A DNA stretch of 64,000 bases, taken from the NCBI RefSeq assembly GCF_020745735.1, contig NC_083448.1:14754006-14818005 (forward strand), in the 5' to 3' direction. The translations under genes and the position numbers were made by a program. Of the stretch, positions 6,833 through 64,000 are shown one piece after another (position 1 is the first letter of the stretch; every line of letters begins with the position of its first letter). The notes under the pieces are model-generated. The model saw only the letters and a program-made list of their open reading frames with translations. It was not told the origin of the DNA and ran no database searches. This DNA comes from Hemiscyllium ocellatum (Eukaryota).

Positions 6833-8064
6833 TCATAGAGATGTTCAGCATGGAAACAGACCCTTCGGTCCAACTCGTCCATGCTGAGCACATATCCCAA
6901 CCTATCTAGTCCCACCTGCCAGCACCCGGCCCATATTCCTCCAAACCCTTCCTATTCATATACCCATCCAAATGCCTCTTAAATGTTATAATTGTACCAG
7001 CCTCCACCACATCCTCTGGCAGCTCATTCCATACACGTACCACCCTCTGCGTGAAAAAGTTGTTCCTAGGTCTCTTTTATATTTTTCCCCTCTCACCCTA
7101 AATCTATGCCCTCTAGTTCTGGACACCCCAACCCCGGGGAAAAGACTTTATCTATTCATCCTATCCATGCTCCTCAAGTTTGTAAACCTCTATAATGTCA
7201 CCCCTCAGCCTTCGACACTCCAGGGAAAACAGCCCCAGCCTGTTCAGCCTCTCCCTGTAGCTCAGATCCTACAACCCTGACAACATTCTTGTAAATCTTT
7301 TCTGAACCCTTTCAAGTTTCACAACATCTTTCCGATAAGAAGGAGACCAGAATTGCATGCAATATTCCAACAGTGGCGTAACCAATGTCCTGTACAGCCG
7401 CAATGTGACCTCCTAACTCCTGTACTCGATACTCTGACCAATAAAGGAAAGCATACCAAATGCATTCTTCACTACCCTATTTACCTGCGACTTCACTTTC
7501 AAGGAGCTATGAACCTGCACTCCAAGGTCGCTTTGTTCAGCAACACTCCCTAGGACTTTACCATTAAGTGTATAAGCCCTGCTAAGATTTGCTTTCCCAA
7601 AATGCAGCACCTCACATTTATCTGAATTAAACTCCATCTGCCACTTGTCAGCCCATTGAACCATCTGGTCCAGATCCTGTTGTAATCTGAGGTAAACCTC
7701 TTGGTTGTCCACCACACCTCCAATTTTGGGGTCATCTGCAAACTCACTAACTGTATCTCTTATGCTCGCATCCAAATTATTTATGTAAATGACAGAAGGT
7801 AGAGGACCCAGCACCGATCCTTGTGGCACTCCACTGGTCACAGGCCTCCAGTCTGAAAAACACCACCCTCTGCCTTCTACCTTTGAGTCAGTTCTCTATC
7901 TAAATGGCTAGTTCTCCCTATATTCCATGAGATCTAAACTTGCTAATTAGTCTCTCATGGGGAACCTTGTCATACGCCTTACTGAAGTCCATATATATCA
8001 TATCTACTGCTATGCCGTCATCAGTCTTCTTTGTTACTTCTTCAAAAAACTCCATCAAGTTTGT
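6833..8064 (-). mobile_element. HER1-like CR1 LINE 3' portion
   Basis: ORF 7413-7841 has VTSGVPQGSVLGP, FADD and WQMEFN.DKCEVLHFG; typical 3' UTR ending ..ctctatgac. Confidence 0.92.
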
Positions 8065-17444: not shown

Positions 17445-33118
<15,674 letters not shown>

Positions 33119-33701
33119 TGTCAGACGGGTTTTTTTTTAATTCGGTTCTCCTCTCACTCACGAACAAGCCTCCTTTTTGTAATATTTTCTTAAAGCTCCC
33201 GTTTTTCTTTTCTTTTTTTTCCCCCCTCCCACGGCGCCTCCACCACCAACCACCCGACGACTGATCTCGGCGCCTGCGCACAACCCGCCGGCACGCCGCC
33301 TCCGCCTTTGCCGCACCGCGCGCCCGCGGGTGGCGATTGGCCGCCGCGCGTGGCGTGGGCGGGGAGTGGAAAAGGGGTGGGGCTGGCCAGCTCGGCGGGG
33401 GGAAGGAGGAGGGGCGACTGACGATGGGCCCGGCCAATCAGCACTCGGGGATGGGAGAAGGGGCGGGGAAAAAAGCGGCTTGCGGGTTTTCGATGGGTCG
33501 CGGCGCCCCAACCAATGGCCAGAGACTCTAGTCCGACGCCGGGCGTCCGATTGCACAGCTGGCAAAGAAGGGGTAAATCGGATTGACCAATCGGATTGCG
33601 AGCCGCCGCGGCTGCGTGGAAGGTTGGAGGGGGCGGGGCGCTGGAAAGAGGCGAGCTAAGGCCCAAAGCCTGGGGCTGGATTTGGACTTGGATCCTTGGG
33701 G

Positions 33702-33736
33702 ATGGCAGCAGCACAGGGTTTCAGTGGGCTGGAACG
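33702..33736 (+). CDS. march5l: MARCH5-like exon 1 (coding part)
   Basis: MAAAQGFSGLE(R); good Kozak (gggATGG); donor gtgagt; phase 2 matches exon 2. Confidence 0.85.
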
Positions 33737-36700
33737 GTGAGTGGAAAAAGGAGGGCGGTTTCCGCAGCACTTCCCACACCCCCAGGCAGTACCTTTCAGA
33801 AGGTCCATTCTCCAACCCGCCTACTTCCTTCCTCTCCCAGAGGATGACTCTGATTGAGGAGGAGAAGGGGGGAAAAAAGTAAACTGGCTGGAAAAGCTCT
33901 GGCACCCTTTCTCGGAGAGAGAAGAGGGTGACAAGAGTTCACCTTTTCCAGTCCAGTGTGACCCTTGTTCATGAGTCAGGATGACTTTTTTGGTTGTTGA
34001 TCCACTCCTCCTCAGGTACACAGACCAGAAGGAGGGTCAACTTCTCCTCTGATAGCAACTACTGACCTATACCCTTGTCCCGACCTGAATTTCCTCAGCA
34101 CTCTCTGCTTTTCAGGATATCTAGGATCCTCATGGCCAGATGTAGGGTAGTTGCAAGGCACTGGGCATCCAAGCTACCTCCCCCTCTTCCCACCTGGCTT
34201 TTTATCCTCCGCACTCTGCTGGGGTCTTTTGTTGTGGGTAGGGGATGGGCACTTGTCCGGCCAACAGCATTTCTTGTTGGAACAGACTTTGAGGATGCGC
34301 TTGAAAGGTTTCCTCCCTCCACCATCCCTTCATTTCACTCGGTAATGTCTTGCCGTGATGAAGCTCAGAGCAGGGAAAGCTTGTTTTGGGGCAGTGGGGT
34401 GTTGTGTCAGACGTGCAGACAAAGTGCCCCTTGAAAAGCACAGGCTGGCAGTCACCATTGACTCGAAGCTGAATATGCTGACCCGAGAGTGAGCATTGAC
34501 ATTGGAGTGCCAGCCTTCGTTTTCATTTCCAGTGGCATTGCTAAGTGATGATTCTACAGGGATTGGAAACGTTTGCTGTCCAGAGTTTGTGTTGTCTATT
34601 GCACATATAGGAGGGTAGGTAACAGTGCAGTTGAAAATGCGTTGCTGGTTAAACCACAGCAGGTCAGGCAGCATCCAAGGAATAGGAAATTTGACGTTTC
34701 GGGCATAAGCCCTTCATCAGTGCAGCCATGTTAAATGTGACATTTGTGCAAGGTTTGAGGTTGTTATCGATTGGTCTGTCCCTCCTAGGGTCGGATATTG
34801 CACTGACACACTGGGGATGATGTTCAGTTTCATTGTCAGTTTGTTACCCGTGCTGAGAGTAGTCTTTTGTTTGGCTCATAAAAGATCTTGATATTTTTGG
34901 GAATAGTGTTTGTCAGCTCGTGCACACTTGTAGAGAATCTTTGTCTTCAGGATACTTAGTGTCAGACTCATTCTCTGAATGTACAATGATCAGTTGGATT
35001 TCCACCTTTGAGTGTGTGCACATGCAAATGTCACATATTATGGTTGGGTTGGTTTTCCTCATCCTCTAGAGATTCTATTCTCCAACAAGGAGCATCATGG
35101 ATCATGCCTGGAGTGTTGGGAACATTATTATAATGGCACAGCTTTGCTTCATTGCAGCTCTCTTGCTAAGCATCACATTGGATCCATTCATGAGGATCAC
35201 CATGCGTTTCTACTCATTTCCTGTTGGCATGCACCAGGCAGGATATAATTATGAAATAATGCAGGCAGCCAAATTTGACACAGACTGTGCCAACCAGGAA
35301 GAATCTGCGGGCTTTGTGTACTCCAAGAGGATGCTGAGGCTGCTGTTGCTCTCTGCGTTTTTCTTGGACTTGGCTTCCATTCTGACAGGACACAAGACCC
35401 TATTACGTTAGCATAAACAGTCTTGATCCCTTTTTGAAGATGGTTACAATTGTGACTTCCTGGAGATGTGCCAGATGAAGGAGATGAGATTGTGCATTTG
35501 GAGGGAGAGCATTTCTGTTTGATACTTTAATATGGTTTCTGAATGCATAAAAATCATTGTTAATTCTCAGCTCTTGGATCTTTTCAAACTTTGGTCATTC
35601 TGTGGTTGTGCCAAGATAATGGCAAAAGCATGCAATGGTTTGTGGTTTGTGGTCCAGACTGACACTTGATAGGGGAGATGTGGAGTTTGCACATTCTCCC
35701 CGTGTCTGCGTGGGTTTCCTCCGGGTGCTCCGGTTTCCTCCCACAGTCACAAAGATGTGCGGGTCAGGTGAATTGGCCATGCTAAATTGCCCATAGTGTT
35801 AGGTAAGGGGTAAATGTAGGGGTATGGGTGGGTTGCGCTTCGGCGGGTCGGTGTGGACTTGTTGGGCCGAAGGGCCTGTTTCCACACTGTAAGTCTAATC
35901 TAATCCTTGAACTGTTCCTTCCAAAAGAGCTTACTGCCTTCTGACCATGATGAATGCCACTCAGTGGGCCAGGTTCATTGGTGCTTGGGCCTGAGGTGAT
36001 CTTGAGTTTTCAGAAGCATCCACACATGTCACGGCTATCAGCAGGTTGTTAGATTTCCTGAACATTTTCCAGCTGTGATCTCTTGTTACACCAAGGGTTT
36101 TATGTTGGACTTCAACTGTCATTCATCTGTAAACCTAATTTAGTTCCCTCAAATGCAGGAAACCCTTGCACTTAAGTTTTAGGAGTTCCTGGATGTCCTG
36201 GTTATTCGACTCAAAGGGACCTTCATCTTTCTTGAGAGAGAAACCAAGTATGTCCTCACAGATGCTGTTCATGATGAATTGAAGGGCAGATCAGATCCTA
36301 TGAACATTCCATGATTCCTGTTTGCTGAGTGTCTCCATGTGACATTTGCTCACTGAACAGGCAGACCTTTGTAGAGTCATTGACTCCATTGATATTCATG
36401 TTCTGGTAACACTGTTTTTGCTGCCATTGCTGTTTTTGGGCCAAGTTTTCGCTTTCAAATAGACCTGTTGAACTTCTACCCAGTGTTGTATGATTTTTAA
36501 CTTTGTCCACCCCAGTCCAACACCAGCATCTCCACATCATGTTTTTGGGCCAGATGGAGATATTAGGCAATGGTCAGTGCAGCTCCAGTCATGGCGTGAA
36601 TCATGCAGATATGCTTGAGGTCCCTCACTCGGGCAATGACAGAGTCAACCTGGTGTCAATTTGTTTCAAGTGAAAGCTTAACCATGCAGTCTTCTATTTG

Positions 36701-39700
36701 TCTTTCTGACAAGAAATGGTACTTGTTATCGAGGGGTACTCGGTTGAGATTCATTTTCCTCATTCCTTCTTGCCAACCAAACCTTTCCAGAGATTTGAGT
36801 CCCTCATCTTCTTTGGGTTACAGGACAACAATGGATCCTGTTTAGAAATATTCTTTGGCCTTGTCTGATGCTTCTACTGTTGGACCATACACAATGACCA
36901 CTGATCTGGCTTCAGATGAGCTGTCATGGTTGGCTGAGTCTTGTTTATCCCAAAAGGGGTCTCACTGTGATGGTCAACTCATTTGTTTTTTCATGTCGAA
37001 ACCAATCCCATGGAATCATTTTGCATCTTCAGTCTTGCCTTTCCAGAAGAGATTTGTCCACCTTCTTGTCCTTTGATTGGTCTTCTCCTTTCCACCATGT
37101 ATAAGCCAGGCCATCAACGTTGCCTTTCCAGCATTGGAATTTCATATTTGTGGTGTGACAGGAATTTGTGAGAGTCAATGTATTCCAGGTTCGCACTTGA
37201 ATTTTGAGTGGGTTGAAAGTGACAATGGGTGGGTTCCTTTAATGTGCAATGGCTGATGTATACTGACAACAAGATAGTGCTGGTGCAACAAGGCTCTGTC
37301 TATTGGCCAATATACGGACAAGATTGGAGACCAGGCTACAACACAGAGACAGGAACTGACCTGCATGTCTTATTGGCCCAATCACCCCTTACAAAACATA
37401 ACAGCCCGGAATGCTGCTTGTATTGTCAGAGCAGAGGTAGTGCTTTTCAACATTGCTCCCCTGTGAAACGAACGAAGACTCACTGCTGCCACAGCAGGCT
37501 GAATCTTTCACTTATAAACAAGTCGTATTATTATTGCAGCAGTGCTTTTTTTTTCGCTCCAAAATTTCTAGTTATGCTTTCACCAAAGAGCAAAACCTAA
37601 AGTTGTCCCTCTGGAAAAAGGGGTATCCATGTGTAAAAACAGGCCGAACAGTTTGAGGACAAATACTTTCAATTGTCTCACTTTGTGATTTGTTCAATAA
37701 TTATAGCATGTTGTCACAGTTTGTCTCATCGCAGCTTTAAATCCCAAAGCACAGCGGTGGGATCAGCTGGGAATCAGCGTAGAGTCAGGCAAATGAGCAC
37801 AAACCTGTCTTTCTTTTTCTCTCTCTCTCTCCTGCCCTCCCCCTCCCCCCTCCCCCCCCACCCCTCCCCCCCCCACCCCTCTGAACTTCGCACATACCAG
37901 ACATACCATTCTAATCCTCATGCCCGTGCCCCTCATTTCCCTCTGTTTCTCAGGCCTTGAATCCCACTGACCCTCATTACCTTGTCATTTGATGTTCAGC
38001 TCCATATTCTCTCCAACTTCATGCTACTGCCTCCCTACCCATACTCCCTCTGATTTTCATGCACTCACCACCCATTTCCACCCCCCAGCAGATGTCACTA
38101 CTCATTATGTGACCCTAATGACTCCACCTCTTCCAGACCACCTCCACCAGCATTTAGCCTCTAATCAGTTTATCCCCATCCTCTCCTTGCCCTCTCTTCC
38201 TTTGACCCTGTCCCCTCTTCGGTAACCACCTCTGGTCACTCTTAGATTCCCTCCACTCCTTCCTGTAATTCCCATACCTTTACTCTTTGTTGTTGCAGTC
38301 CCATCTCTCCAACCCTCTCCTGCATGTTAATGTTGTCAGCCCATTTGCGAGTTTCCAGGAACAAAAGATTAATTTCTCGGGTAGTTAACACTTAAGTCCC
38401 AAAACATCATAGGGTGCTATCTCATGAGTTTAGCCTGAGGGTCAACATGCTGCAGGAGAGAGGTAGGGTTTGAGACAATGAGCTTTCAGGTTAACCCCGA
38501 GCTTGTGTGGTTCGACATTATCGGTGAAAGATTCAATGGGGATGGGGGGTTGCAATTGTTTTAAAATGAAACCTACAGGGATATGCCCACCTAGAGTTGG
38601 CAAAGTTATCCTTTTTGTCTTCCAAATGTTGTTTTTCTATGCTTATGCCTATCTTTAAGATATGATGATAGATGGAGCTACTGTCAAAGAGATACAATGT
38701 TTCCTCTTGTTTGATAGCAATGTCCTTGATTGCTTTCGGCAGGAACTGCTGGGTATGCTTTGCCACTGACCTTGATGATCGCTCGGCAGAATGGGTAAGC
38801 CCATGTCGATGTAAAGGGTCCACAAAATGGATACACCAGGCATGCCTACAACGATGGCTGGATGAGAAACAGAAGGGGAACAGTACAGGCCGAGTGGCCT
38901 GTCCACAGTGCAACACTGAATATCTGATCGTCTTCCCAAAGTTAGGTGCGTACAAGACTTTGACCTCCTCTCTCTCTGTCTTCAGCTCCCCCATTAAAAA
39001 TGCTAAATTTATAAAAAAAACCTTTCCAACCACAATGTACTAATCTGCTGGTTTTCACCCTTCCGAAATGCATCATGTATGTTCAGCTACTTCTTAAGAA
39101 TCCATTCTTCCCAGCTGAGCCCAAGATTTGGAATGTGGCCAATACCGTGCCTTAAATTCAATCTCCAAAAAAAGTCCTTTCGACTAAACATTAATCAGTC
39201 GTTTAGATTGTTCATTAAGCGACTATAATTGTACTACCTATAATTTACAGGGTTGCATTGGTATTAGCACTGACTTTGCAGAACAAGAATTACAACACTC
39301 ATAATTGATACACACAGAATTGAAGACAGCAATTAGATCTCCATCTGGATCATTGTGATTCAGTCCACTGCCCTCATCTTTTAATGATTCAAGACTCCAT
39401 GCTGTACATCGCTATGACTATGACTCTATGACCTCTAAATTGTGTTCATAAACATTTGATCGAAACTGTCAGACTTGGTACTCACTGAATTTGTTGACCG
39501 TGACGGGCAAAAATAGGAAATGGAGGAACTCTTCCTCCTATTTTGGTAATTAACCATTACTTCATCCCTTGAGCCTAAAGAATTGTCCAAAGACATTGGC
39601 CAGTGAGCCAAAGGAGGAGATGTTAATAGGGGTAAACCTGGTTAAAAAGCTGAGTCTTAAATCTTGCTTTAACAATATGAAGTGCAAAGGCAGAAGGTAT

Positions 39701-42700
39701 CTTTCGGCTTGCAGTCTGAGACTGGGAAGGTACCAGAAAGTACAAGATAACAAACACAGTTGTATGAATAAGCTAGAGATGAATACAGGAAGGGAAAGTT
39801 ATTCAATCCTGACCGAGCACCAGGAGCTATTTAAGCCTCGCAAAGTTTCCAAACTGGGAGCCTAATGACCAGATTTGCTTTCAAAGCATTATCTGAAAAG
39901 AAACCAGAGTATGATGTAGTTTTATGCATAACTTGTATTCATGTTGTTTTTTTGTAATTTTTTTCTTCAGGTCCAGTCGTTTACTCCTTGCATCAAGTTG
40001 ACCGCATTCTGTCCAAAGCCAGCCCCTTTGCAGCAGCCAGCATTGTGGTGGGGACCGTCTATTGGTCGGCAGTGACTTACGGAGCAGTGACTGTCATGCA
40101 GGTCGGCCTTCCCATATCAAGTGGATTGTTGTCCAGAGTCAAGAATTGTTAACTCACTGGCCACTTTGTATCAATTGTTAAGTCAGACCGTGACTTGCTG
40201 AAGGTAGCCCTTGTGAGAACAAGGTGGTCCATATTGCAACAGGGACAACAGGTCAAGTCTGTGACCCTAAGATGTGGAAAAACACAGTAGTGACAATTAT
40301 CGTAGGATAGTTCTGTCACTTGGAGGTGTTGAAGTTTCATATAACTATTCAGTTTGCAATTGTAGTTTGCATGTCTTGTAATAGCATATCAGTTTTCTGC
40401 TCTACTTGTATTTTGAAAAGGGTTTGAATGTTGCATCGTCAACTGTGTGCAAGCAGTTTATGGTCAGATTCCAGTGGGCAAGCTTCACAGGTGTGTTCTG
40501 CCATTTACCGCATCGCACAGTTGGAAGCAAGAAAGCTGCATATCCCCATCCTGCCTATATAGGTTGGTTACACACCTGAAGCAGCCAGTTACTTCCATTT
40601 CACCCGTGGCATTGACTTGCTCAGGTCACAATTCTGCTGGATTCATAGAGAACTCATTAATGAAGTCAGTAAGATTCTCTGGGACTTTCACTTGACCCTC
40701 ACCCTTAGGGAGAACAATTCCACTATCATGTAACTGAATGTAGCAAAACTTGGAAATTTCAAACCACGAGGAAGGCATCACAACAAAATAGATGGCAGTA
40801 AATTGTCAGATAGTTCAATTAAATAACAGGGTAACTTGTCATGAGAGGAAGGAGCAATATGAGGTGAGCTGGGCCATGCCTCAAACCGTGATGCTTGTGG
40901 CCTGGGAGCTCTTAAGCGCTTACACTCGGTGACGAAGTCAGAAAATTGCCTTCATCAGTGCTGGCACTCCTTGCTAGATTAAGAAAAGCGAATTATGGAT
41001 TATCACGTTATTACATTGCATTAAACAGAACAAAGTACTTTGAGAGTGTTGCAGAGCAGCAGCCTCCATTGTCTTTGGCTGTTAGTTTCATTAAGTGGAT
41101 ATCAGTGAGCATAACAATTTACTTTGTGCAAGAACATACTAAATATGTACAGGATTGACCATATGGCCTTTGAGAAGCTTCTTCAGCTTCAACTTTCCCA
41201 CTCGCTCCCCAAACCCTTTGATTCCCTGATAACCAAAAATGTGTCCATCCTGCCCTTACAGGTTTTCAACAATGGAGCATCCACCCCTTTTGCGTTAAGG
41301 AACTTCAGAAGTTCAGAGCTCTTTTTAAGTGAAGTGATTTCTCCTCATGTCAGTCCTATATGATTGGACCCTTGTGCAGAGACTGTCCCTTATCCTCAGT
41401 TTTGCTGACCTTGATGTCTGTCCTGTCAAACTCCTTGAGAATCATTTCTGTTTCAGTAGATCACCTGTCGTTATTGTCATTTCCCAAGAAAATCAGCCCA
41501 ACTTACTGAACGACACATCATGGGACAACCACCTGAAACCAGGGACTGATCTTGCCAATGAGTTTTTTGGGTTTTGGAGACTAGTGTTCAATCGAAATGT
41601 GAGCTTTTCACACAACATAACTCGCACAACATAATAGTTAAGCAAATAGTTCAGATTTGTTGGTGGGGGGCATATTATGAAAGCATTTAAGGGAATAGGT
41701 GATGAATCTCAGTTAGCAAAGATGAGTGGAGGCTTGACTGACGTCCCTGGGCTGAATTTCTGGTTTCTTCGCCAAACATCCTATATAATTCGATGCAAAC
41801 AGATGGGTTTTGGACAACACTGTAACTTGATCTGTCTTGATCTCTCTGTAGGTTGTTGGACATAAGAAAGGTTTGGACTTAATGGAGCGGGCAGACCCAC
41901 TGTTCCTGCTGATGGGGCTTCCTACCATTCCTGTGATGCTTATTCTGGCCAAGATGATCCGGTGGGAGGACTTTGTGCTTCGCATGTGGCGCAAATACTC
42001 CAGCAAGCTGCAAGTTCTAAGTAACATTTTCCCAGGTGAGACTCCAGGCTGGTCCCATTAATCACTAATCACTGAATTGTCATATAGACAGGAAGCCAAG
42101 AGATTTGAGATTTTTTTTAAAGAAGAATTGTAGCTCAGGTTGAGGTTCAGGTTGCAAGTTTGCTCGCTGAGCTGGCAGGTTTGTTTTGTCATCATCAATA
42201 AATACATCGATTTGGACCCCATTTACCAACCTCTGACAAAAAAAAATGTCATCCACCTTAAGAGACCAAGACACACAAAAAGAGAGTGGGACACAACACC
42301 AGGACTTAACAGAGGCTCACTGATGATGTTACCTAGCATGATGACAAAACATCTGAAAACGAACCTGCCAGCTCAGCGAGCAAACTTCCAACCATGGTTA
42401 TTTTAGTTACTCCTTTCTCATGGATGCAAAAATGTTCATTCTAATCATGTTTTGGCCCACGTATGTCAGATGTTCATATTTGTTTCTCTGCATTATCTTG
42501 CAACTCCTAATCTGTACACCACCTTCAGTTGTGCATCCCTCCAATATCTCTGCATTGATCTAATCCTGGTTGCTTGACCTCCAATTTTAATCAGTTGATG
42601 GTAGTGCCGACTGCTGCCTCTGCTGTCAGCTTTCGTGTCCTCTTTATGCTTTGCTAACCTTTCCTTCCTCCTTTGCGAACCTCCTTAAAATTGACCTCTT

Positions 42701-45394
42701 TATTCCAGATGTCTTTTGATCTCCTTAAGTAGCGTTGGGCAAATTGTATTTGCCTATGCTTCTGTGAAGAGCCTTGGGATGTTTCAGACAACTCTGTCCG
42801 TCTCGTTTCACTATCTTTCTTTTTAAACCACGCAGTATTTTGATTGATCTCATACACTGTTCAATCTTGCAGTCTCTTGTTCTCATTGCATTTCCCTCAC
42901 CATCACCCCTGTTTCTTAATTGCATTTGACACTTTCTAATCACATTGTATATCTAGTTTTTGCTGAAATTGTCCATCTTCTCCCTTGTTGAGAAGCATTG
43001 CTCAAAACGATGGATCGCCAAATGCTGGAGAAGACCTGATAGATAGATAAAATGAAGAACTGTGGATGCCAGAGATCTGAAGCAAAAACAGAAATTGCTG
43101 GAGAAATTCAGCAGGGCTGACAGCATCTGTAAGGAGAAAACAAAGTTAATGTCTAGAATAAGTGTCACTGAAGTTCAAACCTTGACACAGTTTTTATCTC
43201 CACCGATGCTGCCAGGACCTGATAGGTGTCATTTTTAGTTGTTTCAAGCTGCTTTGAGAAATGAACAATGAAGTCATCCCTGCAGTAGCAGTTTGACTGG
43301 ATGTATGTGCAGCTCCCTTCATTTTATGTGTTATTCAGGTTGTGTTGAACATTGTGTAGGTTTTGGATGTCCCGTTCCTCGTATACCAGCTGAGACCAGC
43401 TATCAGAGTGACCACATGTCTGTCTCCCGCATCTTGTGTGGTGCCCTTGTGTTCCCCACAATCTCCAGCATGGTTGGCAAGCTGATATTCAGTGGTGTTC
43501 ACTCCAACCTCCAGCGAACCATCTTGGTGAGTATATGTACCACGTCCTTCGATTTTTCTCCCTTGCTCTCCCAAATGCGCTGACTTGTGCCGGGACTCGA
43601 TTTCATTTGCACCATTGGTCTTTGGTCATTCTGGAATGTCCAGTGCTTTAACTAGTCATCTTGAGTGAGGCTGACTTTAAGGCTTTGCATTTCCTCAGTG
43701 CAAACAGAAGTCATCTGGATAGGATCTTTTATTGTAGGTATGCATCATTCAAGCCCAGCTTGAGTACGTTGCCTAAGCTGATGCTGAATGCGAAGCACAC
43801 TGGATTTTCCATTCCAGTGACCTCATGGTAGTGATGGAAGGGGAATACCTGGTTCCTTCACTTACTGTCTACCATTCTTTCCTCATCCAACACCACTAAA
43901 AGTAGATGGGCCATCATTCACCTTTCAGCTTCTTTGTTGTCTAATAGAAGAATTCATGCCCTATCAGTTTGGAAAGCTCTTCTCAAAGGCCTATACAACC
44001 TTTTCCACCTGGATGAACCAACCTCTCACAATCTGTCCTGTCAAGCTCTTTACAATCTTCATACATTTCAATGATATCACTTCAAGTTGAGATAATATAG
44101 TTTCATACTGTTCAGATTTTATCATAAGCCTGTTAATGAGTCATACAGCGCAGAAACATGCTGACCAAGATTCTCAAACTAAACTAGTCCCATTTGGCCC
44201 ATATCCTTCTGAATGTTCCTTATTCATGTCCCTGTCCAAATGTCTTTTAAATTTTGAAACTCTTCCTGCATCTATTGTTTTCTCTAGTTTATGAACCACC
44301 TGTTTTGTGAACAAGTTGTCCCTTGGATCCCTTCTCAATCCTTCTCCTCTCAATTCAAAATTATGCCCTCCAACCACTCTGCATTGGTTGTAATCTCTCT
44401 TGGCCGGCTGTGTAAGTCAGCGGGTATATTGTCAGCTAAGCCTTTGGATAATGGCAGTTAGATTTCTATACCTCTTGGAGTGTAATCCCATTGCAATAGT
44501 CTCCTGTCTCCTCAAAAAGGAACAGGTATATCATAGGTTAGGATCGCTTGTAATTTCCCCAGCACCAAATGTCCTGCTGATGGTCGCAATTAATTCCTCA
44601 CAAAAGGCCTACTTGGGGCAAGATCAGAGGTTTGTGGTCAAGTGACTTGTGTTGCATTCAGAGCCAATGCATGGACGGGGAAAGAAAATCAGAAAAATCA
44701 AGATTTTATGTAATTTTTGAAAGCCTTACACTGCTAGATTAAGAGTTCAGTCTGAACCACTGTAAATTCATCTGAGTTTGATTTGAGGATAATTCCAAGT
44801 GAAACCTGTTAGATAGATCAATAGTTCTCAAGAATTTCTGTATCCATGTGTTAAGGGTTTCTTTCTTAACAAATGCAAGAAAACAAATGTTGCATGGGCT
44901 CAAACATTCTCAAAAGTGAAGGATGGTTTCAACCAAAGAATTTTGAATTGGGGTGAAGGGAACTCGGAAGTTGTTTTGATGAGGGACACAAAGGGGCAGG
45001 TGAACAATTTTCACTGAAGAGCAGCTTATTAATTGGGAGGTTATCGATACAACAATGAAAGATGAGATTGGTGAAAATTGTCAGGACTTGAATTGCTGAA
45101 TCAGTGACAGTAACAGAATGTAGAATCCAAATATTAAGGTGTTGTGGAAAAATATTCAACAAAAAAGGGGAAACAGTAAAACTGTGGGGAAAGCCAGCAT
45201 TATGGGATGTGGAGAGATCATTCAGAGAGTCATCCAATGCACAAATGGCTCTCTGCTGAATTGTGAAATTCCAGTTGCTGCTGTATAGATAAATGGCCTT
45301 GTGAAACAAGGAGAGTCAAGCTGAACTTTATGAGAAGCAGCTTTATGGATCCATAGCACTTTGCAACTATCTTGCTGTGCGTCAAGATTGACTT

Positions 45395-45430
<36 letters not shown>

Positions 45431-45592
45431 CAGGGCGGGATTGCCTTCATTGCCATCAAAGGGGCCCTAAAAGTTTACTTCAGACAGCAGCAATATCTGA
45501 TGCAAGCAAACCGCCGGATTCTGAACTATCCTGAGCGAGATGATGACCAGGAAGAACTCCAGGCAGGTTATGAGGATTCTGGGAGTGACTAA
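33702..45592 (+). CDS. march5l: MARCH5-like (MITOL paralog) RING-CH E3 ubiquitin ligase; 6 coding exons, 292 aa
   Basis: Exons 33702-33736, 38743-38945, 39971-40101, 41852-42035, 43360-43526, 45434-45592 total 879 nt, all GT-AG. RING-CH CWVC..PCRC..H.AC..CPQC and four hydrophobic segments. WVSPCRCKG, WIHQ, WLDEKQKG, GTVYWSA and HKKG resemble fish march5l more than MARCHF5. Confidence 0.9.
34631..34720 (-). mobile_element. ~90-bp solo PLE family A terminus containing the hammerhead core (34693-34720)
   Basis: Near-identical to 3155-3245; flanked by direct repeat cagtgcag (34623-34630, 34718-34725). Confidence 0.9.
35679..35904 (+). mobile_element. Young 5'-truncated HE1-like V-SINE
   Basis: Intact CpG-rich V-domain and tail ending ctaatctaat. 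Confidence 0.9.
36450..36540 (+). mobile_element. PLE family C terminal fragment
   Basis: Reverse complement of 13430-13515. Confidence 0.7.
38743..38945 (+). CDS. march5l: MARCH5-like exon 2 (RING-CH)
   Basis: NCWVCFATD..EYLIVFPKL. Confidence 0.95.
39971..40101 (+). CDS. march5l: MARCH5-like exon 3
   Basis: GPVVYSLHQVDRILSKASPFAAASIVVGTVYWSAVTYGAVTVMQ. Confidence 0.95.
41852..42035 (+). CDS. march5l: MARCH5-like exon 4
   Basis: VVGHKKGLDLMERADPLFLL..SNIFP. Confidence 0.95.
42115..42393 (+). mobile_element. Short PLE family B derivative with inverted ends and a degenerate hammerhead (42317-42356)
   Basis: gtttgctcgctgagctggcaggtt (~42158-42181) is mirrored by aacctgccagctcagcgagcaaac (~42362-42385); uca-CUGAUGA-u-guuacc..gaugac-aAAA-ca-UC-uga. 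Confidence 0.8.
43360..43526 (+). CDS. march5l: MARCH5-like exon 5 (alternative in-frame acceptor at 43339)
   Basis: GFGCPVPRIPAE..SNLQRTIL. Confidence 0.92.
44140..44375 (-). mobile_element. CR1 3' fragment
   Basis: GHNFELRGE and FKRHLDRDMN motifs plus 3' UTR. Confidence 0.75.
45399..45427 (+). repeat. (TC)n microsatellite forming the polypyrimidine tract of MARCH5L exon 6
   Basis: About 14 TC units ending 6 nt before the exon. Confidence 0.9.
45434..45592 (+). CDS. march5l: MARCH5-like exon 6 (coding part, stop TAA)
   Basis: GGIAFIAIKGALKVYFRQQQYL..NYPERDDDQEELQAGYEDSGSD*. Confidence 0.95.
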   Translation, partial: GGIAFIAIKGALKVYFRQQQYLMQANRRILNYPERDDDQEELQAGYEDSGSD

Positions 45593-59049: not shown

Positions 59050-60513
59050 TGAATGCATGACTGCAACAAATGATAGTACGTAGCCTTGTGTCACACAGTG
59101 GGTCGGGGGGAACAAAAAAATACACAGATTATTCGTTTTTTTGCAAAAAGAAGATAAACTGCTCTGAGAATGCGGAACAGGGAGTGGTTAAGGTGAATGA
59201 ATGACGCATTTGAGGGAGAAAGTTTTGCAAAGAGGCGAGGCAAGAGTGGGGGGCGGGTGGTGGAGAGAACAAAAACAACACATCGACTGAAGGTCACGTT
59301 GAAAGGGAATAAGCCAGAAAACACTTGAAATGCTCAGCCGGTCAGGCTGCACCGCAGAGGGTGGTGGGGGGCTGAGTATTTCCAGCATCCTCTGCTTACA
59401 CTTGACGTGAGCAACACCGGCCAAAAAAAAAGTTGCACTTTTGCTGAGCAAATGGGAGCAACGCCAGCGAGTGGAGGAAGGCGGCGTCAAGCAGACGCGG
59501 CAGCATCGATGCGGTGGGCCGAATGGCCCTGCGCTGCACGCCAGGAAGACGAGATGTTTCAGATTCCACGCGTCCTTGCAATAAAAGACCTCCCCCGACA
59601 CACAATAATGACAGCTAGCCAGCCCATGAGAGACGGTGGGATTTGGACAGGGGAACAAAACCACCCCCCAAAAATTAATCCGCATTTATGCTTCGTAAAA
59701 CATTCGGTTCAAAGCACCAATCGGGAAAGCATTGAGGAAAGGAGGGGGTGAGGGGTGCAGGAGAAATTGCAATGAAATTATAAAGGGGAGGGAGAAAGGC
59801 TGGGCTGGGAGGTGGGGTCAGAAACAACACGGAATTGGATTTCTCTTATTGCCGCAAAGTGGAAACTGGGGCCAAAATTGCCCTGCGCAGGTCAGGTGCA
59901 GGACTGGAAAAACACACACACAGGGACAGAAAAAATCCAGATCAACCAGAATGCTTCAGAGTGTCAGAGCTTCAGTTCCGGAGTAAAGAGGCGATGAGCA
60001 GGTCATTAAACATCATCTTGTGATCTTGCTTATTCCATTTTGACGCGATCGATTGAGGATCTGAGGAGGAGGCAGTGGGTAGGGAGGAGGAGGGTGGGGG
60101 GCTAAAAAGCACACACGTAACACACACAAAAACAAAACTGGTGGTGATCGCCTTTCTGTCGCGGTGTGTCTGTGCTTTCGTTTTCGTTGCATTGGCTGGT
60201 GCGGACGCGTTCGATTTATTTATTTTATTTATTTCTCTATCTGTCTGTCATCCCTTTTCCACCCCCTTCTCTCTTTGCTGTGCATTTTCTAGTTGGGAGA
60301 CTGGGGCGACTCAGCTGTTACAACATCGCCGCGCTGGGCAGGGCAAAGCTGAGATCGACGTCCCACGCCACGAACTGCACTGACTTTCTGCCAACTGTTA
60401 TCTCCTCTGCAACCCCCTCCTGAAGCGAGAGAGAGAGAGACACAGAGAGGGGGGGTTGAGAGAAAGGCAAAAAAAAACCCTCCCCCCCCCCCCCCCCCTT
60501 TGCCAATCCAGAC
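59050..60513 (+). promoter_or_regulatory. CpG-enriched promoter / 5' UTR region of the CPEB-like gene
   Basis: Repeat-free and CpG-retaining; GC box ~59250, TGACGTGA 59403-59410, CCAAT 59717-59721; strong polypyrimidine tract plus AG at 60291-60292 (possible 5' UTR intron acceptor). Confidence 0.6.
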
Positions 60514-61245
60514 ATGCTCCAGAATGACACTAAAAGGCAACCAGTTTGCTGCCCCTATCTGGAGCAAAACCTGGAGTCCTTGAAAAGTCCTGAGGTCAAC
60601 AGCGGCGATGGGTCCACCTCCTCCTCCTCCTCCTCCCAGCTCGACTGCCCGCCTGCCCCGGCCAGCTTGGTTCTGCAAGAGCAAGGAGGCAGCACTTCGA
60701 CACTTAACGCTCTGGGATGGTCCACTAGCCAGTCCGGTGAGGAAAGCCTTCTCCAGCAAGGAGTCCTGCCGACTGCCATGTTGCTACCCAAAATGGTGCA
60801 CCTGGGGCCCCTCTTTGGAGGGACTTTCCCCTCGGTGCAGCAGATGGGGCTGGCGCAGCAGCACAGGAGATCGCCTCTAGGGCACCACCCTCACCAAGGC
60901 ACCAACACCACCACCTCCGCCTCCCAAAGGAATAGCTACAGCCTGCAGCAGCAGCAGCAGACCTTCAGGGCTCTGAACTGGGGCAGCCATCAACAGCAGA
61001 CCGGAGGAGGGAGTGGCGGCTGGGGCAGTGTCAGCAATAACTGCGGGAGGGGACTGAGAAGGTCAGCCGGAGTAATGGGCATCTCGAACTCCATTCCTTC
61101 CTGCTCCTCCAAGAGGTCCTATTCCAGTCACATGATGGTGCCTCCAAAACTGAACAGGGGCCGCCCGGCATTCGCTTCGAAACCGTGGATGGAAGAGAAC
61201 CCGTTGAGGACAGATGGCAACAGCAACTGGCTGCCTCACCATCAG
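60514..61245 (+). CDS. First coding exon (244 aa, disordered N-terminus) of a CPEB2/3/4-subfamily cytoplasmic polyadenylation element-binding protein; the gene continues beyond the window
   Basis: Motifs FGGTF, QQHRRSP, QRNSY, GGWG, RGLRR and KRSYSSHMMVPPKL..ASKPWMEENPLRTDGNSNWLP align with the end of the first coding exon of CPEB2/3/4 (K.F.S.VIAPPKF..KSWMEDN.FRTDN..LLP). Phase-0 donor cag|gtaag; in-frame stops lie upstream of the ATG. Confidence 0.85.
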
Positions 61246-61504
61246 GTAAGCCATGATTTACAGTTTGTAAATTTAACAGTATGGTGCAAGTATCTGTGAT
61301 TTGTTTTCAACATAACAAGAAAGAGGGGCAACAGGGGGTCATATGGTCCTTTGAACCTGTTCCTCCACCTGTCTCATTTGGATGACTGAAATATTTTCGT
61401 GTTCACATCCGTAACCTTATGGAATGTCGGGCTAGTTTTGCTTATCTTCTTTGGGAGGACAAAGCATCACCCTAGCAATAGTCCAGTGAGCTATGATTGA
61501 TTTG

Positions 61505-61846
61505 GGGAGGTGATGGCACAGTGGTATGGATGGACTGTTAATCCACAGAGCCAGATCATGTTTGGGGAGCCCCGGTTTGAATCCCACCACAGCAGAGGGA
61601 GGATTCTGAATTTGAAGAAAGTAATCTGGATTTAAGAGTCTCGTGATGACCAGAGTCCATTGTCAATTGTCGGAAAAACCCATCTGGTTTACTAGTGTTC
61701 TTTTGGGAAGAAAACTGCCATCCACACTGACAGGCCTGACCAACAGGTGACTCGAGACCCACAGCCTTTTTGGCAATTAGGGATGGACAATAAACGTTGC
61801 TTAGCCAGTGGCACCCTCACACTCAGTGAATGAATAAAGAAAAAAA
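61505..61846 (+). mobile_element. Shark SINE with a tRNA-like head and a LINE-derived tail
   Basis: A-box-like tggcacagtgg, B-box-like ggtttgaatccc, tail ggcaattagggatgg.caataaa..gaatgaataaa. Degenerate minus-strand relatives lie at ~12325-12730 and ~17840-17970. Confidence 0.7.
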
Positions 61847-62454
61847 ATTCTCTCCAAGGTCTGCACATCTTTACTTAAGGCCTCATGAGAAATGATCATC
61901 TCCAGTCACCTGAAGTAGATGAGTGAGTTAATGCAGTGCTTGGTGTGGGATGCGCAGATGTGGGGTTTCAACTTGATCTCTCGTGTGCAGCATAGCTGGG
62001 GCACAGAAAATAAGAGCAGGGGGTCACATGAGTTCCATGTTCAACATGAAAAGGCAACAACGTGACTGTCGCATGGACTGCAGTAAACATTCAACCAATC
62101 TTCCTTCAGTTATACACACACACATTTTGTTCTATTGCTTCTCCTGAATTTAATATGCTATTGCTTCACCACCTTCCATAATATCCTCCACCCATCCAAT
62201 TCTGGGTTCTCTGGCCTCCCTGATTTTCATTAGTGGCGTGTTTCCATCATCCAAGGCCTTCATCTCTGGAAATACCTCTCTTATCTGCTCTCTCTTTATC
62301 TCTCTCTTTCTTCACCTTCACGACATTGCTTAAAATCCACCTCGTTGACCTAACTTTTAGTCCGATATCTCCATTTCTGACTCTGCCCTCACAATTCTAT
62401 AACGTTGGGTTCCTGCAAAGACAGATCCGAATGTTTTCCTATTTGAAAACTGCC

Positions 62455-64000
62455 ACATAGATGTACAGCATGGAAATGGACCCTTCGATCCAACTTGTCC
62501 ATGCCGACCAGATATGCCAACCCAATCTAGTCCCACGTGCTAGCATGGTGGCTCAGTGGTCAGCACTGCTGCCTCACAGCGCCAGGAACCCGGATTCAGT
62601 TCCTGCCTCAGATAACTGTCTGTGTAGAGTTTGCACATTCTCCCTGTGTGGGTTTCTTCCGGGTGCTCCGATTTCCTCCCACAGTCCGAAGGTGTGTAAG
62701 TTAGGTGACTTGGCCATGCTAGATTGCCCATTGTGTTAGGTGCATTTGTCAGGGGTAAATGTAGAGGAATGGGTCGGTGTGGACTTGTTGGGCCGAAGCG
62801 CCTGTTTCCACATTGTAGGGAATGTAATCTAATCATATCCCTCCAAATCCTTCCTATTCACATACCCATCCAGATGCCTTTTAAATATTGCAACTGTACC
62901 AGTCTCCACCACTTCCTCTGGCAGCTCATTCCTACAAGTACCACTCTTTGTGTGAAAAAGTTGCCCCTTTGGTATCTTTTATATCGTTCCCCTCTCACCC
63001 TAAACCTATGATCTCCAGTTCTGAACTACCCGACCCCAGAGAAAACACTTTGTCTGTTTACCCTATCCATGGCCCCTCATGATTTTATAAACCTCCATAA
63101 GGTCACCCCTCAGCCTCCAATGCTCCAAGGAAAACAGCCCCAGCCCATTCAGCCTCTCCCTATAGCTCAAATCATCCAACCCTGGCAACATCTTATAATC
63201 TTTTCTGAACCCTTTCACGTTTCACAACATCCTTCACTATCCTATCTATCTGTGACTCTATTTTCAAGGAGCAATGAACCTGCACTCCAAGGTCCCTTTG
63301 TTGAGCAACACTCCCTAGGACCTGACCATTAAGTGTATAAGTCCTGTTAAGATTTGCTTTCCCAAAATGCATCACCTCGCATTTATCTAAATTAAACTCC
63401 ATCTGCCACCACTCAGCCCATTGGCCCATCTGATCAAGACACCGTTGTAATCTGAGGTAAGCTTCTTCACTGTCCAAAATACCTCCAATTTGGTGTCATC
63501 TGCAAACTTACTAACTGTACCTCTAATGCTCACATCCAAATCATTTACATAAACGACGAAAAGTAGTGGACTCAGCACCGATCCTTGTGGCACTCCATTG
63601 GCCACAGGCCTCCAGTCTGAAAAACAACCCCCCACCATCACCCTCTGTCTTTTACCTTTTGAGCCAGTTCTGTATCCAAATGGCTAGTTCTCCATGAGAT
63701 CTAACCTTGCTAACCAGACTCCCATGGGGAACTTTGTCGAACGCCTCACTGAAGTCCACACAGATCATGTCTACTGCTCTGCCCTCATCAATCCTCTTTG
63801 CTACTTCTTTAAAAAAATCAAATTTGTGAGACATCATTTCCCACGCACAAAACCATGTCGACTATCCCTTATCAGTCCTCATCTTTCCAAAAACATCCTG
63901 TCCCTCAGGATTGCCTCCAACAACTTGCCCACCACCAACATCAGGCTTACCTGTCCACAATTCCCTGGCTTGTCCTTAGCATATTTCTTAAATAGTGGCA
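62455..64000 (-). mobile_element. HER1-like CR1 LINE 3' portion, running off the window
   Basis: DFSEAFDKVPH, GVPQGSVLSP, KFADDTK and WQMEFNLDKCEVMHFG motifs. Confidence 0.92.
62543..62833 (+). mobile_element. HE1-like V-SINE inserted in the CR1 3' UTR
   Basis: A box tggctcagtgg, V-domain, tail ending aatctaat; the CR1 sequence resumes on both sides. Confidence 0.9.

What the first reader, a model, noticed from the sequence alone, without database searches (positions are those of the whole stretch)
60514..61245. Probable fourth CPEB2/3/4 ohnolog, not matching any single mammalian CPEB
Seen: a 244-codon exon with CPEB2-4 landmark motifs (RRSP, GGWG, PPK, WMEEN..RTD, phase-0 donor). It is shorter and more divergent than the equivalent exons of CPEB2, CPEB3 or CPEB4 as I remember them. 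Known: human CPEB2, 3 and 4 lie on chr4, 10 and 5, members of a four-fold paralogon whose remaining arm is on chr2/8, where ACTR1B sits and no CPEB exists. Inference: this is the missing fourth copy, kept in sharks. An extra fish paralog may already be reported or mis-annotated as 'CPEB2/3-like'; I cannot check that here.
Basis: partly seen in the sequence, partly recalled or inferred. Interest (0 to 1): 0.8.

Follow-up and report, generated by a model that had tools for sequence, protein, structure and literature searches.

The report
Fifth CPEB gene kept in sharks
This exon starts an intact, expressed extra member of the CPEB family of translation-controlling RNA-binding proteins; sharks and rays keep it, no counterpart was found in bony vertebrates, and databases label it only "CPEB2-like", so it is a modest but real addition to a family usually said to have four members.

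Summary
Window 60514-61245 (+) is a 244-codon first coding exon ending in a phase-0 CAG|GTAAGC donor. It is 100% identical to residues 1-244 of RefSeq XP_060712340.1, "CPEB2-like" of Hemiscyllium ocellatum. That protein has 574 aa and carries RRM_7, RRM and CEBP_ZZ domains.

Full-length orthologs exist in 10 sharks and 8 rays or skates. Skate RNA contigs show the spliced mRNA, and exon 1 has dN/dS of about 0.15.

The same species also carry true CPEB3. A CPEB2-type first exon (whale shark) and a CPEB4 (stingray) were each seen in one species.

In trees the gene forms its own clade (100/100), outside the CPEB2, CPEB3 and CPEB4 clades. The best grouping is (X+CPEB3 | CPEB2+CPEB4), support 94/82. 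Nesting inside any of the three is rejected (AU p 0.017 to 4.5e-5).

True CPEB3 sits head-to-head with a MARCHF5-type gene in catshark and guppy. Here a second MARCHF5-like gene and a centractin unlike ACTR1A lie upstream. This supports a duplicated block.

The fourth-paralog reading is supported. A 2R-ohnolog origin is likely (about 0.7) but not proven. I found no paper describing it. The scan has no note of it on other DNA.

The parts
60514..61245 (+). First coding exon (244 codons, ATG to phase-0 donor) of the extra CPEB gene ('CPEBx'; RefSeq 'CPEB2-like'). It encodes the disordered N-terminal regulatory region.
   Evidence: ORF and sequence. 244/244 identity to P0248 = XP_060712340.1. dN/dS 0.15.
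61246..61251 (+). Splice donor GTAAGC of intron 1.
   Evidence: Sequence. The homologous donor (CAGCAG|GTAAAC) is used in skate mRNA contigs that join exon 1 to exon 2, 17.6 kb downstream.
61252..64000 (+). 5' part of intron 1. Exon 2 lies beyond the window. It holds reverse-transcriptase ORF fragments on the minus strand at about 63.2-63.8 kb.
   Evidence: tblastn of P0248 finds only exon 1 in the window. Collinear with the whale shark intron up to 62454. ORFs with reverse-transcriptase-like sequence by my own reading, no family search run.
59943..60059 (+). 117-nt element conserved between shark and skate, 455-570 nt upstream of the ATG. Probably an upstream 5'-UTR exon or the core promoter of CPEBx.
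   Evidence: 85% identity to skate L003 9767-9882, just upstream of the annotated start of skate isoform X1.
38741..45592 (+). Context: intact MARCHF5-like gene. Coding exons seen at 38741-38947 (RING-CH), 39973-40101, 41852-42037, 43359-43526 and 45434-45589 plus stop. Same strand as CPEBx; it ends about 15 kb upstream of the CPEBx ATG.
   Evidence: Open frames. RING-CH matches in PDB. ag/gt splice flanks at most of the boundaries printed.
19997..28236 (-). Context: centractin (ARP1) gene. Six exons were seen here and more lie outside these bounds. It is head-to-head with the MARCHF5-like gene.
   Evidence: Open frames. Best PDB matches are ARP1/alpha-centractin, with 63/73 identity in exon 23457-23672. 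Splice flanks.
32001..34000 (.). Context: G+C-rich stretch (0.56) between the divergent centractin and MARCHF5-like genes; a likely shared promoter region.
   Evidence: Composition profile. Position between the two genes.

Best explanation
Window 60514-61245 is the first coding exon of an intact, transcribed gene for a fifth vertebrate CPEB, the fourth member of the CPEB2/3/4 (Orb2-type) subfamily. I call it CPEBx; RefSeq calls it 'CPEB2-like' or 'CPEB3-like'.

Shown: the gene has 8 coding exons over about 50 kb and encodes about 570 aa. These comprise a 244-aa disordered N-terminal region (this exon), a short CPEB3-like linker, RRM1, RRM2 and a ZZ zinc-binding domain. It is present in sharks and batoids and is under purifying selection. 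It is distinct from CPEB2, CPEB3 and CPEB4, which were found alongside it in elasmobranchs (CPEB3 in many species; CPEB2-type and CPEB4 in one each).

Inferred mechanism: like its relatives, it binds U-rich cytoplasmic polyadenylation elements in 3' UTRs through the RRM pair, and it controls translation and poly(A) length of target mRNAs. The RNP motifs and all Cys/His zinc ligands are kept. The N-terminal region would serve as the regulatory, phosphorylatable part. There are 28 substitutions fixed at RNA-binding-domain sites that never vary in CPEB2/3/4. These suggest altered targets or partners.

Inferred origin: a duplication older than the split of cartilaginous and bony vertebrates. Most likely this is the second-round (2R) sister of CPEB3, duplicated together with a MARCHF5-type neighbour and later lost in bony vertebrates.
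For: Identity and completeness:
- The exon is 100% identical to P0248 (574 aa).
- Pfam RRM_7 126 bits, CEBP_ZZ 69 bits and RRM_1 39 bits are all above their cut-offs.
- The closest solved structure is CPEB4 RRM1-2, 2MKI, E 1e-117.
- The gene spans 49.6 kb in this genome's assembly.
- Eight coding exons were mapped in whale shark and skate.

Expression:
- Skate RNA-derived contigs L001, L002 and L006 carry the full ORF. L001 maps to the skate genome in 8 blocks.
- Small runs X9 and X10 hold 100% of the exon's words but only 0.82 of exon plus flanks.

Selection:
- Exon 1 dN/dS is 0.14-0.16.
- The RNA-binding domain is 97-99% identical between sharks and batoids, yet only 84-86% identical to any CPEB2/3/4. 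Those three are 96-99% identical to each other.

Distinctness and age:
- Four clean clades appear: X 100/100, CPEB3 99/96, CPEB2 100/99, CPEB4 100/99. The split X+CPEB3 | CPEB2+CPEB4 has 94/82 support.
- The tree from the N-terminal part alone gives the same picture.
- AU tests reject X with elasmobranch CPEB3 (p 0.016), X with chondrichthyan CPEB3 (p 0.017), X with Callorhinchus CPEB2 (p 4.5e-5) and X with chondrichthyan CPEB4 (p 0.008).
- The linker matches CPEB3 best.
- No closer relative appears among 1252 hits; scores drop from at least 708 bits to at most 434 bits outside elasmobranchs, leaving aside one insect model (598 bits) inflated by a duplicated segment.

Synteny:
- True CPEB3 is head-to-head with a 281-282-aa RINGv gene in catshark and guppy.
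- The window has a second MARCHF5-like gene upstream of CPEBx.
- Beside it is a centractin only 86% identical to ACTR1A in one exon.
- CPEB3 and CPEBx lie on records of different length in 10 species.
Against: - With insect and sponge outgroups the backbone collapses, so the root is unknown.
- The RNA-binding domain alone is uninformative. The placement therefore rests on N-terminal and linker columns, where X is only 31-37% identical.
- X sits on a long stem (0.91 changes per site). This can push a fast-evolving recent duplicate out of its true clade.
- The AU p values against nesting in CPEB3 are only about 0.017.
- X as sister of CPEB2 or of CPEB4 is not rejected (p 0.15).
- In Carcharodon carcharias CPEB3 and CPEBx are on records of identical length, 122,117,421 bp, so probably on one chromosome.
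- No ortholog was seen in Callorhinchus. Retention since 2R therefore needs two losses, in chimaeras and in bony vertebrates.
- Orthology of the neighbours to ACTR1B and to a bony-fish MARCHF5-like gene was not tested by trees.
- The CPEB2, CPEB3 and CPEB4 genes of Hemiscyllium itself were not seen directly, only those of other elasmobranchs.
- RNA binding and translational control are inferred, not assayed.
Confidence: 0.7

Rival explanations
1. Lineage-specific duplicate. A MARCHF5-CPEB3 block was copied in the elasmobranch (or chondrichthyan) stem. Both copies then diverged fast, and the long branch pulls CPEBx out of the CPEB3 clade in trees.
For: - CPEBx was found only in elasmobranchs and not in Callorhinchus or any bony vertebrate.
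- Its nearest relative by linker and by tree is CPEB3.
- The stem is very long (0.91) and the later rate is very low, the pattern of a post-duplication burst.
- CPEB3 and CPEBx share one record in the white shark.
- The RNA-binding-domain tree cannot separate X from CPEB3.
Against: - AU tests reject X with elasmobranch CPEB3 (p 0.016) and with chondrichthyan CPEB3 (p 0.017).
- CPEB3 of cartilaginous and bony vertebrates forms a 99/96 clade without X.
- X groups with the shortest of the three stems, not the longest, so simple long-branch attraction does not explain its place.
- The copy sits beside a centractin that differs from ACTR1A at 10 of 73 residues. From my memory of human ACTR1B, 7 of these fit ACTR1B. 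A random insertion would not be expected in the matching paralogon arm.
- CPEB3 and CPEBx are on different chromosomes in 10 species.
Confidence: 0.2
2. The duplication is older than the two vertebrate genome duplications, or comes from the first round only. CPEBx would then be sister to all of CPEB2+3+4 rather than to CPEB3.
For: - X is equidistant (84-86%) from CPEB2, 3 and 4 in the RNA-binding domain.
- The root could not be placed.
- Sister positions to CPEB2 or CPEB4 are not rejected.
Against: - The best tree and the N-terminal tree both give X+CPEB3 against CPEB2+CPEB4 (94/82 and 89/88).
- The linker is most CPEB3-like.
- A MARCHF5-type neighbour was seen beside CPEB3 and CPEBx. From memory of the human map, it is not beside CPEB2 or CPEB4.
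Confidence: 0.07
3. The exon is simply the shark ortholog of CPEB3 or CPEB2 (as the RefSeq names suggest), or a dead relic exon.
For: RefSeq names it 'CPEB2-like' or 'CPEB3-like'. A MARCHF5-type gene lies nearby, as at CPEB3.
Against: - True CPEB3 coexists with it in at least 11 elasmobranch species. A CPEB2-type gene does in whale shark and a CPEB4 in stingray.
- The clades are separate.
- Full-length spliced mRNA exists.
- dN/dS is 0.15.
- All domains are intact.
Confidence: 0.02

Closest known systems
[quoted passage not shown]
   Same: Same domain order: disordered N-terminus, RRM_7, RRM, CEBP_ZZ. It is the nearest relative by linker (71-72% identity) and by tree. A MARCHF5-type gene is a neighbour at both loci.
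   Different: - Exon 1 is only 31-35% identical and lacks the MQDDLLMDK start.
- The RNA-binding domain is 85-86% identical, against 98.8% between shark and human CPEB3.
- The long alternatively spliced linker segments of CPEB3 are absent.
- The MARCHF5-type neighbour is in tandem about 15 kb upstream, not head-to-head.
- No gene was called within 10 kb downstream in whale shark or skate, whereas guppy CPEB3 has a BTAF1-like gene there.
- It lies outside the gnathostome CPEB3 clade.
CPEB2 and CPEB4 (the other members of the 'CPEB2 subfamily', PMC2995058)
   Same: Same domains. Shared N-terminal landmarks: RRSP, G-rich GGWG, PPK, W(M/I)E(D/E)N..R(T/A)D.
   Different: About 84-85% identity in the RNA-binding domain. 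Nesting inside either clade is rejected (p 4.5e-5 and 0.008). It lacks the MGDYGFG N-terminus of the 870-aa CPEB2 sequence fetched here, an N-terminus I also recall for CPEB4. RefSeq's name 'CPEB2-like' is a similarity label, not an orthology call.
CPEB1 and Drosophila Orb2 (wider CPEB family; four vertebrate CPEBs per PMC4580432)
   Same: RRM-RRM-ZZ RNA-binding module. The solved CPEB1 RRM1-2 and ZZ structures match it (2MKH, 2MKK, 2M13).
   Different: CPEB1 is far more distant (183 bits against 397 bits for CPEB4). The Orb2-type insect sequence serves only as a distant outgroup.
Other paralogs reported as arising early in vertebrates and found in sharks, e.g. nanos1A/1B (PMC5932020) and CTCFL (PMC7471279)
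   Same: By their abstracts, these are paralogs that arose early in vertebrate evolution and were recognised through shark genomes. That is the same kind of evolutionary finding.
   Different: nanos1B is also found in some basal bony vertebrates, and CTCFL is kept in amniotes. I found no CPEBx ortholog outside elasmobranchs. I read only the abstracts of those papers.

Membership tests
CPEB2-4 / Orb2-type CPEB subfamily | RRM_7 (PF16367) + second RRM + CEBP_ZZ (PF16366) at the C-terminus | tested here: met
   P0248, whose first 244 aa are this exon: 126, 39 and 69 bits, all above the Pfam cut-offs. CPEB4 RRM1-2 structure 2MKI matches at E 1e-117.
CPEB2-4 / Orb2-type CPEB subfamily | RNP motifs of both RRMs and the Cys/His zinc ligands of the ZZ domain are kept | tested here: met
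   Read from the P0248 sequence: KVFVGGL, KGYAFLLF, TVFVGGV and KGAGRVAF are present, and all seven Cys and two His of the ZZ region are present. None of the 28 X-specific substitutions falls on them.
CPEB2-4 / Orb2-type CPEB subfamily | Long first coding exon for a disordered N-terminus with the subfamily's short motifs, ending at a phase-0 donor after ...LLP.Q | tested here: met
   RRSP, GGWG, PPK and WMEEN..RTD are present, and the donor follows NWLPHHQ. Matching exon ends are seen in CPEB2 and CPEB3 fragments.
CPEB3 orthologs | Falls inside the gnathostome CPEB3 clade | tested here: not met
   The CPEB3 clade (99/96) excludes X. AU p 0.016 and 0.017 against nesting. True CPEB3 coexists with it in at least 11 elasmobranch species.
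CPEB3 orthologs | Head-to-head with MARCHF5, and a BTAF1-type gene downstream | tested here: not met
   This arrangement is seen in catshark (RINGv gene only) and in guppy (both genes). In the window the MARCHF5-like gene is on the same strand, about 15 kb upstream. No gene was called within 10 kb downstream in whale shark or skate.
CPEB2 or CPEB4 orthologs | Falls inside the gnathostome CPEB2 or CPEB4 clade | tested here: not met
   Both clades (100/99) exclude X. AU p 4.5e-5 for CPEB2 and 0.008 for CPEB4.
2R ohnolog of CPEB3 (fourth copy) | The duplication node predates the split of cartilaginous and bony vertebrates | tested here: inconclusive
   The unrooted trees and AU tests favour it. 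However, rooting failed, the stem is long, and the RNA-binding domain alone is uninformative.
2R ohnolog of CPEB3 (fourth copy) | Lies in a paralogous chromosome block, on a different chromosome from CPEB3 | tested here: inconclusive
   MARCHF5-type/CPEB pairs occur at both loci. The neighbouring centractin is unlike ACTR1A; its ACTR1B identity rests on recalled residues. The records differ in 10 species but are the same in the white shark. No chromosome-scale comparison was possible.
2R ohnolog of CPEB3 (fourth copy) | Absent, or present only as relics, at the matching locus of bony vertebrates and chimaeras | not testable with these tools
   There is only indirect evidence: no closer hit among annotated proteins. 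Genomic searches of vertebrate assemblies were not available.

The most novel reading that the evidence does not exclude
CPEBx is a true 2R ohnolog of CPEB3 that survives only in elasmobranchs. After an early burst it fixed 28 changes at RNA-binding-domain positions that are invariant in every other CPEB2/3/4 (for example RR to CC in RRM1). On this reading it recognises different RNA targets or partners, making it a functionally new fifth vertebrate CPEB, perhaps specialised for germline or neuronal translation in sharks and rays.
Probability: 0.3. Interest if true: 0.6.

Novelty: new member of a known kind. Interest (0 to 1): 0.45.

Why it matters
Reviews and primary papers describe vertebrate CPEBs as a family of four (for example PMC4580432), with CPEB2, 3 and 4 as near-identical paralogs (PMC2995058).

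An elasmobranch-wide fifth gene would complete the expected four-copy set for the CPEB2 subfamily. It would also give a natural experiment: the RNA-binding domain is frozen at 96-99% identity in CPEB2/3/4, but here it changed by about 15% and then froze again. That contrast could show which residues set target choice.

Automatic names ('CPEB2-like', 'CPEB3-like', varying between species) hide the gene from orthology-based studies. The MARCHF5-like/CPEBx pair also adds a marker for reconstructing this paralogon in early vertebrates.

Tried and rejected
- Pfam on the exon alone gave nothing, as expected for a disordered region.
There is therefore no read-level RNA evidence for this species.
- Rooting with Anopheles Orb2 and sponge CPEBs collapsed the backbone, with branches of 1.6-10. 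I dropped these outgroups.
- The tree from the RNA-binding domain alone was uninformative.
- Two apparently intermediate hits are gene models with an internally duplicated segment that doubles their score. They are the Anopheles quadriannulatus protein (598 bits) and the Acipenser sinensis 'UNVERIFIED_CONTAM' protein (156 bits). They are an Orb2 and a CPEB4, not orthologs.
- tblastn of the window's MARCHF5-like exons against the 10-kb flanks of whale shark and skate CPEBx, and against the guppy CPEB3 flank, found nothing. The neighbour's coding exons lie beyond the flanks. No MARCHF5 tree could be built.
- The look-up of encoding contigs returned no DNA for Hemiscyllium, Chiloscyllium, Scyliorhinus or Carcharodon, and no record for P0028 or P0295.
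- Literature searches for CPEB5, march5l/marchf5l, CPEB with shark terms, the SRR accessions, and CPEB with paralogon/ACTR1 found nothing relevant. The supplements of PMC8040251 are not held.
- I did not classify the centractin by tree. Its ACTR1B label rests on tool-shown differences from ACTR1A plus recalled ACTR1B residues.

Full report
**1. The observation**

The window holds an ORF at 60514..61299 on the + strand. Its first 732 nt run from the first ATG after an in-frame stop to CATCAG|GTAAGC, a strong donor placed after a complete codon. Pfam finds nothing in the exon alone, as expected for a disordered N-terminal region.

**2. What the exon belongs to**

An exhaustive representative search found one near-identical protein, then only weak matches (31-46% identity). 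The best of these was a CPEB3; all the others I read (13 of the 14) are CPEB2-type first exons.

A word-indexed search found a skate protein, "CPEB3-like" of Amblyraja radiata, at 65% identity, with a ZZ domain behind the exon. Searching with that protein brought a sharply separated top group of full-length proteins of about 570 aa. They come from Leucoraja, Hypanus, Narcine and Chiloscyllium and score 708-931 bits. All other true CPEBs score 434 bits or less.

Cluster look-ups extend the group to 10 sharks:
- Chiloscyllium plagiosum and C. punctatum, Hemiscyllium, Stegostoma, Rhincodon
- Carcharodon, Scyliorhinus torazame, Mustelus, Heptranchias, Heterodontus

and to 8 batoids:
- Leucoraja, Amblyraja, Hypanus, Hemitrygon, Pristis, two Mobula species, Narcine.

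All are named "CPEB2-like" or "CPEB3-like" by RefSeq. One further unnamed UniRef member probably comes from another shark.

The window's exon is 244/244 identical to XP_060712340.1 of Hemiscyllium ocellatum (P0248, 574 aa). The window is therefore epaulette shark DNA, and the gene is already modelled there. It spans 49.6 kb on a 22.25-Mb record.

P0248 has RRM_7, RRM_1 and CEBP_ZZ above the Pfam cut-offs. Its best solved relative is the CPEB4 RRM pair, 2MKI. The condition "no RRM exons follow" is therefore not met.

**3. Gene structure, expression and selection**

I mapped the whale shark and skate proteins on their genomic loci (L004, L003). Both show 8 coding exons. Intron 1 is about 13 kb in whale shark and 17.6 kb in skate, which explains why exon 2 is not in the window.

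Three skate contigs assembled from sequencing runs SRR5172150-52 (2.0-2.1 kb) carry the complete ORF. L001 maps to the skate genome in 8 blocks at 96-100% identity and uses the homologous exon-1 donor. These are spliced mRNAs.

For the window's own species I have only indirect evidence. Two small runs (150-253 million letters) hold all words of the exon but only 0.82 of exon plus flanks. This fits RNA.

Exon 1 has dN/dS of 0.147 against whale shark (dS 0.30) and about 0.15 against skate.

In the RNA-binding domain (259 aa), sharks and batoids are 97-99% identical, yet the protein is only 84-86% identical to any CPEB2, 3 or 4. Those three are 96-99% identical to one another from shark to human. 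There are 28 changes fixed at positions invariant in all sampled CPEB2/3/4. The RNP motifs and zinc ligands are untouched. The pattern is an early burst of change followed by strong constraint for as long as sharks and batoids have been separate.

**4. Is it a fourth lineage?**

True CPEB3 is annotated in at least 11 of the species that have this gene. Whale shark also has a CPEB2-type first exon, and Hypanus has a CPEB4.

A maximum-likelihood tree gives four clean clades (40 proteins, 563 columns, LG+C20 PMSF, no outgroup):

| Clade or split | Support |
|---|---|
| CPEBx clade | 100/100, stem 0.91 |
| CPEB3 clade | 99/96 |
| CPEB2 clade | 100/99 |
| CPEB4 clade | 100/99 |
| Central split X+CPEB3 / CPEB2+CPEB4 | 94/82 |

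Each of the three known clades contains both cartilaginous and bony vertebrates.

The N-terminal-plus-linker columns alone give the same picture. The RNA-binding domain alone has too few changes to resolve anything. Distant outgroups (insect, sponge) collapse the backbone.

AU tests give:

| Constraint | p (AU) | Outcome |
|---|---|---|
| X with elasmobranch CPEB3 | 0.016 | rejected |
| X with chondrichthyan CPEB3 | 0.017 | rejected |
| X with Callorhinchus CPEB2 | 4.5e-5 | rejected |
| X with chondrichthyan CPEB4 | 0.008 | rejected |
| X sister to CPEB2 | 0.15 | not rejected |
| X sister to CPEB4 | 0.15 | not rejected |

A search with the linker alone returns CPEB3 first, at 71-72% identity.

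The gene is therefore not nested in CPEB2, 3 or 4. CPEB3 is its most likely sister.

**5. Neighbourhood**

Upstream in the window, on the same strand, lies an intact five-exon MARCHF5-like gene. It has a RING-CH exon at 38741-38947 and its stop at 45590-45592.

Head-to-head with that gene is a centractin gene on the minus strand. A G+C-rich stretch at 32-34 kb lies between them.

True CPEB3 in the catshark has a 282-aa RINGv gene head-to-head about 2.7 kb upstream. Guppy CPEB3 has the same (281 aa), plus a BTAF1-like gene downstream. From my own knowledge this is the human BTAF1-CPEB3-MARCHF5 order. A CPEB gene and a MARCHF5-type gene thus occur together at both loci, which points to a block duplication rather than a single-gene copy.

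The window's centractin differs from mammalian ACTR1A at 10 of 73 residues in one exon. From my memory of human ACTR1B, 7 of these 10 are the ACTR1B state. This is a lead, not a test.

CPEB3 and CPEBx lie on records of different length in 10 species, with CPEBx often on a 15-28-Mb chromosome. In the white shark both lie on a record of 122,117,421 bp. I read this as a probable later fusion, but it is a caveat.

Counting events does not decide between the scenarios:
- Retention since 2R needs two losses, in bony vertebrates and in chimaeras.
- A stem-elasmobranch duplication needs one early loss plus one duplication.

**6. Verdict**

The exon begins a real, expressed, conserved fifth vertebrate CPEB gene. 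That it is a separate paralog is close to certain. That it arose before the crown of jawed vertebrates, most plausibly as the 2R sister of CPEB3, I put at about 0.7. A stem-elasmobranch block duplication with rapid divergence gets about 0.2.

Function is inferred from the intact domains: CPE-type RNA binding and translational control, possibly with altered specificity.

The gene is present in public annotation under shifting similarity-based names. I found no paper that describes it. The scan's only other note on it is on this same window (s1-148441). That note suggested the ACTR1B-MARCH5L-CPEB block, which I checked in part.

Noticed in passing
window 59943-60059: A 117-nt stretch upstream of the CPEBx ATG is 85% identical to skate L003 9767-9882, just upstream of the annotated start of skate isoform X1. 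It is the only non-coding piece of the locus that aligns between shark and skate. It is probably a 5'-UTR exon or the core promoter.
   Followed up: partly
window 60420-60500: The leader just before the ATG holds a (GA)n run, a G run, an A run and a C run of about 20 bases. The effect on transcription or translation is unknown.
   Followed up: no
window 19997-45592: A centractin gene (minus strand) and a MARCHF5-like gene (plus strand) are arranged head-to-head around a G+C-rich stretch at 32-34 kb. At the true CPEB3 locus the MARCHF5-type gene instead pairs head-to-head with CPEB3 (catshark, guppy). The promoter pairing therefore differs between the two paralogous blocks.
   Followed up: partly
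P0016 (Amblyraja radiata XP model, 414 aa): This RefSeq model joins exon 1 directly to the RRM2 exon and lacks the linker and RRM1, which are present in Leucoraja and in skate mRNA contigs. It is probably an annotation or assembly gap, not a real isoform.
   Followed up: partly
P0021 (Anopheles quadriannulatus A0A182XLY1) and P0135 (Acipenser sinensis FKN15_077847): Both gene models contain an internally duplicated segment (168 and 57 residues). The duplication inflates their search scores and made them look like intermediates.
   Followed up: yes
Carcharodon carcharias record of 122,117,421 bp (P0249 and P0295): CPEBx and true CPEB3 appear to lie on the same chromosome-scale record in the white shark. 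In 10 other elasmobranch species they lie on different records. The distance between them could not be obtained.
   Followed up: partly
window 62800-63850 (minus strand), 7413-7841 and 3382-4631: ORFs that look like reverse-transcriptase fragments of retroelements by my own reading (no family search was run), lying in intron 1 of CPEBx and in the first 8 kb of the window.
   Followed up: no
Scyliorhinus canicula CPEB3 locus: A DnaJ/DnaJ_C gene of 341 aa, whose gene range is only 1026 bp (so apparently intronless), lies on the opposite strand inside the CPEB3 gene range.
   Followed up: no
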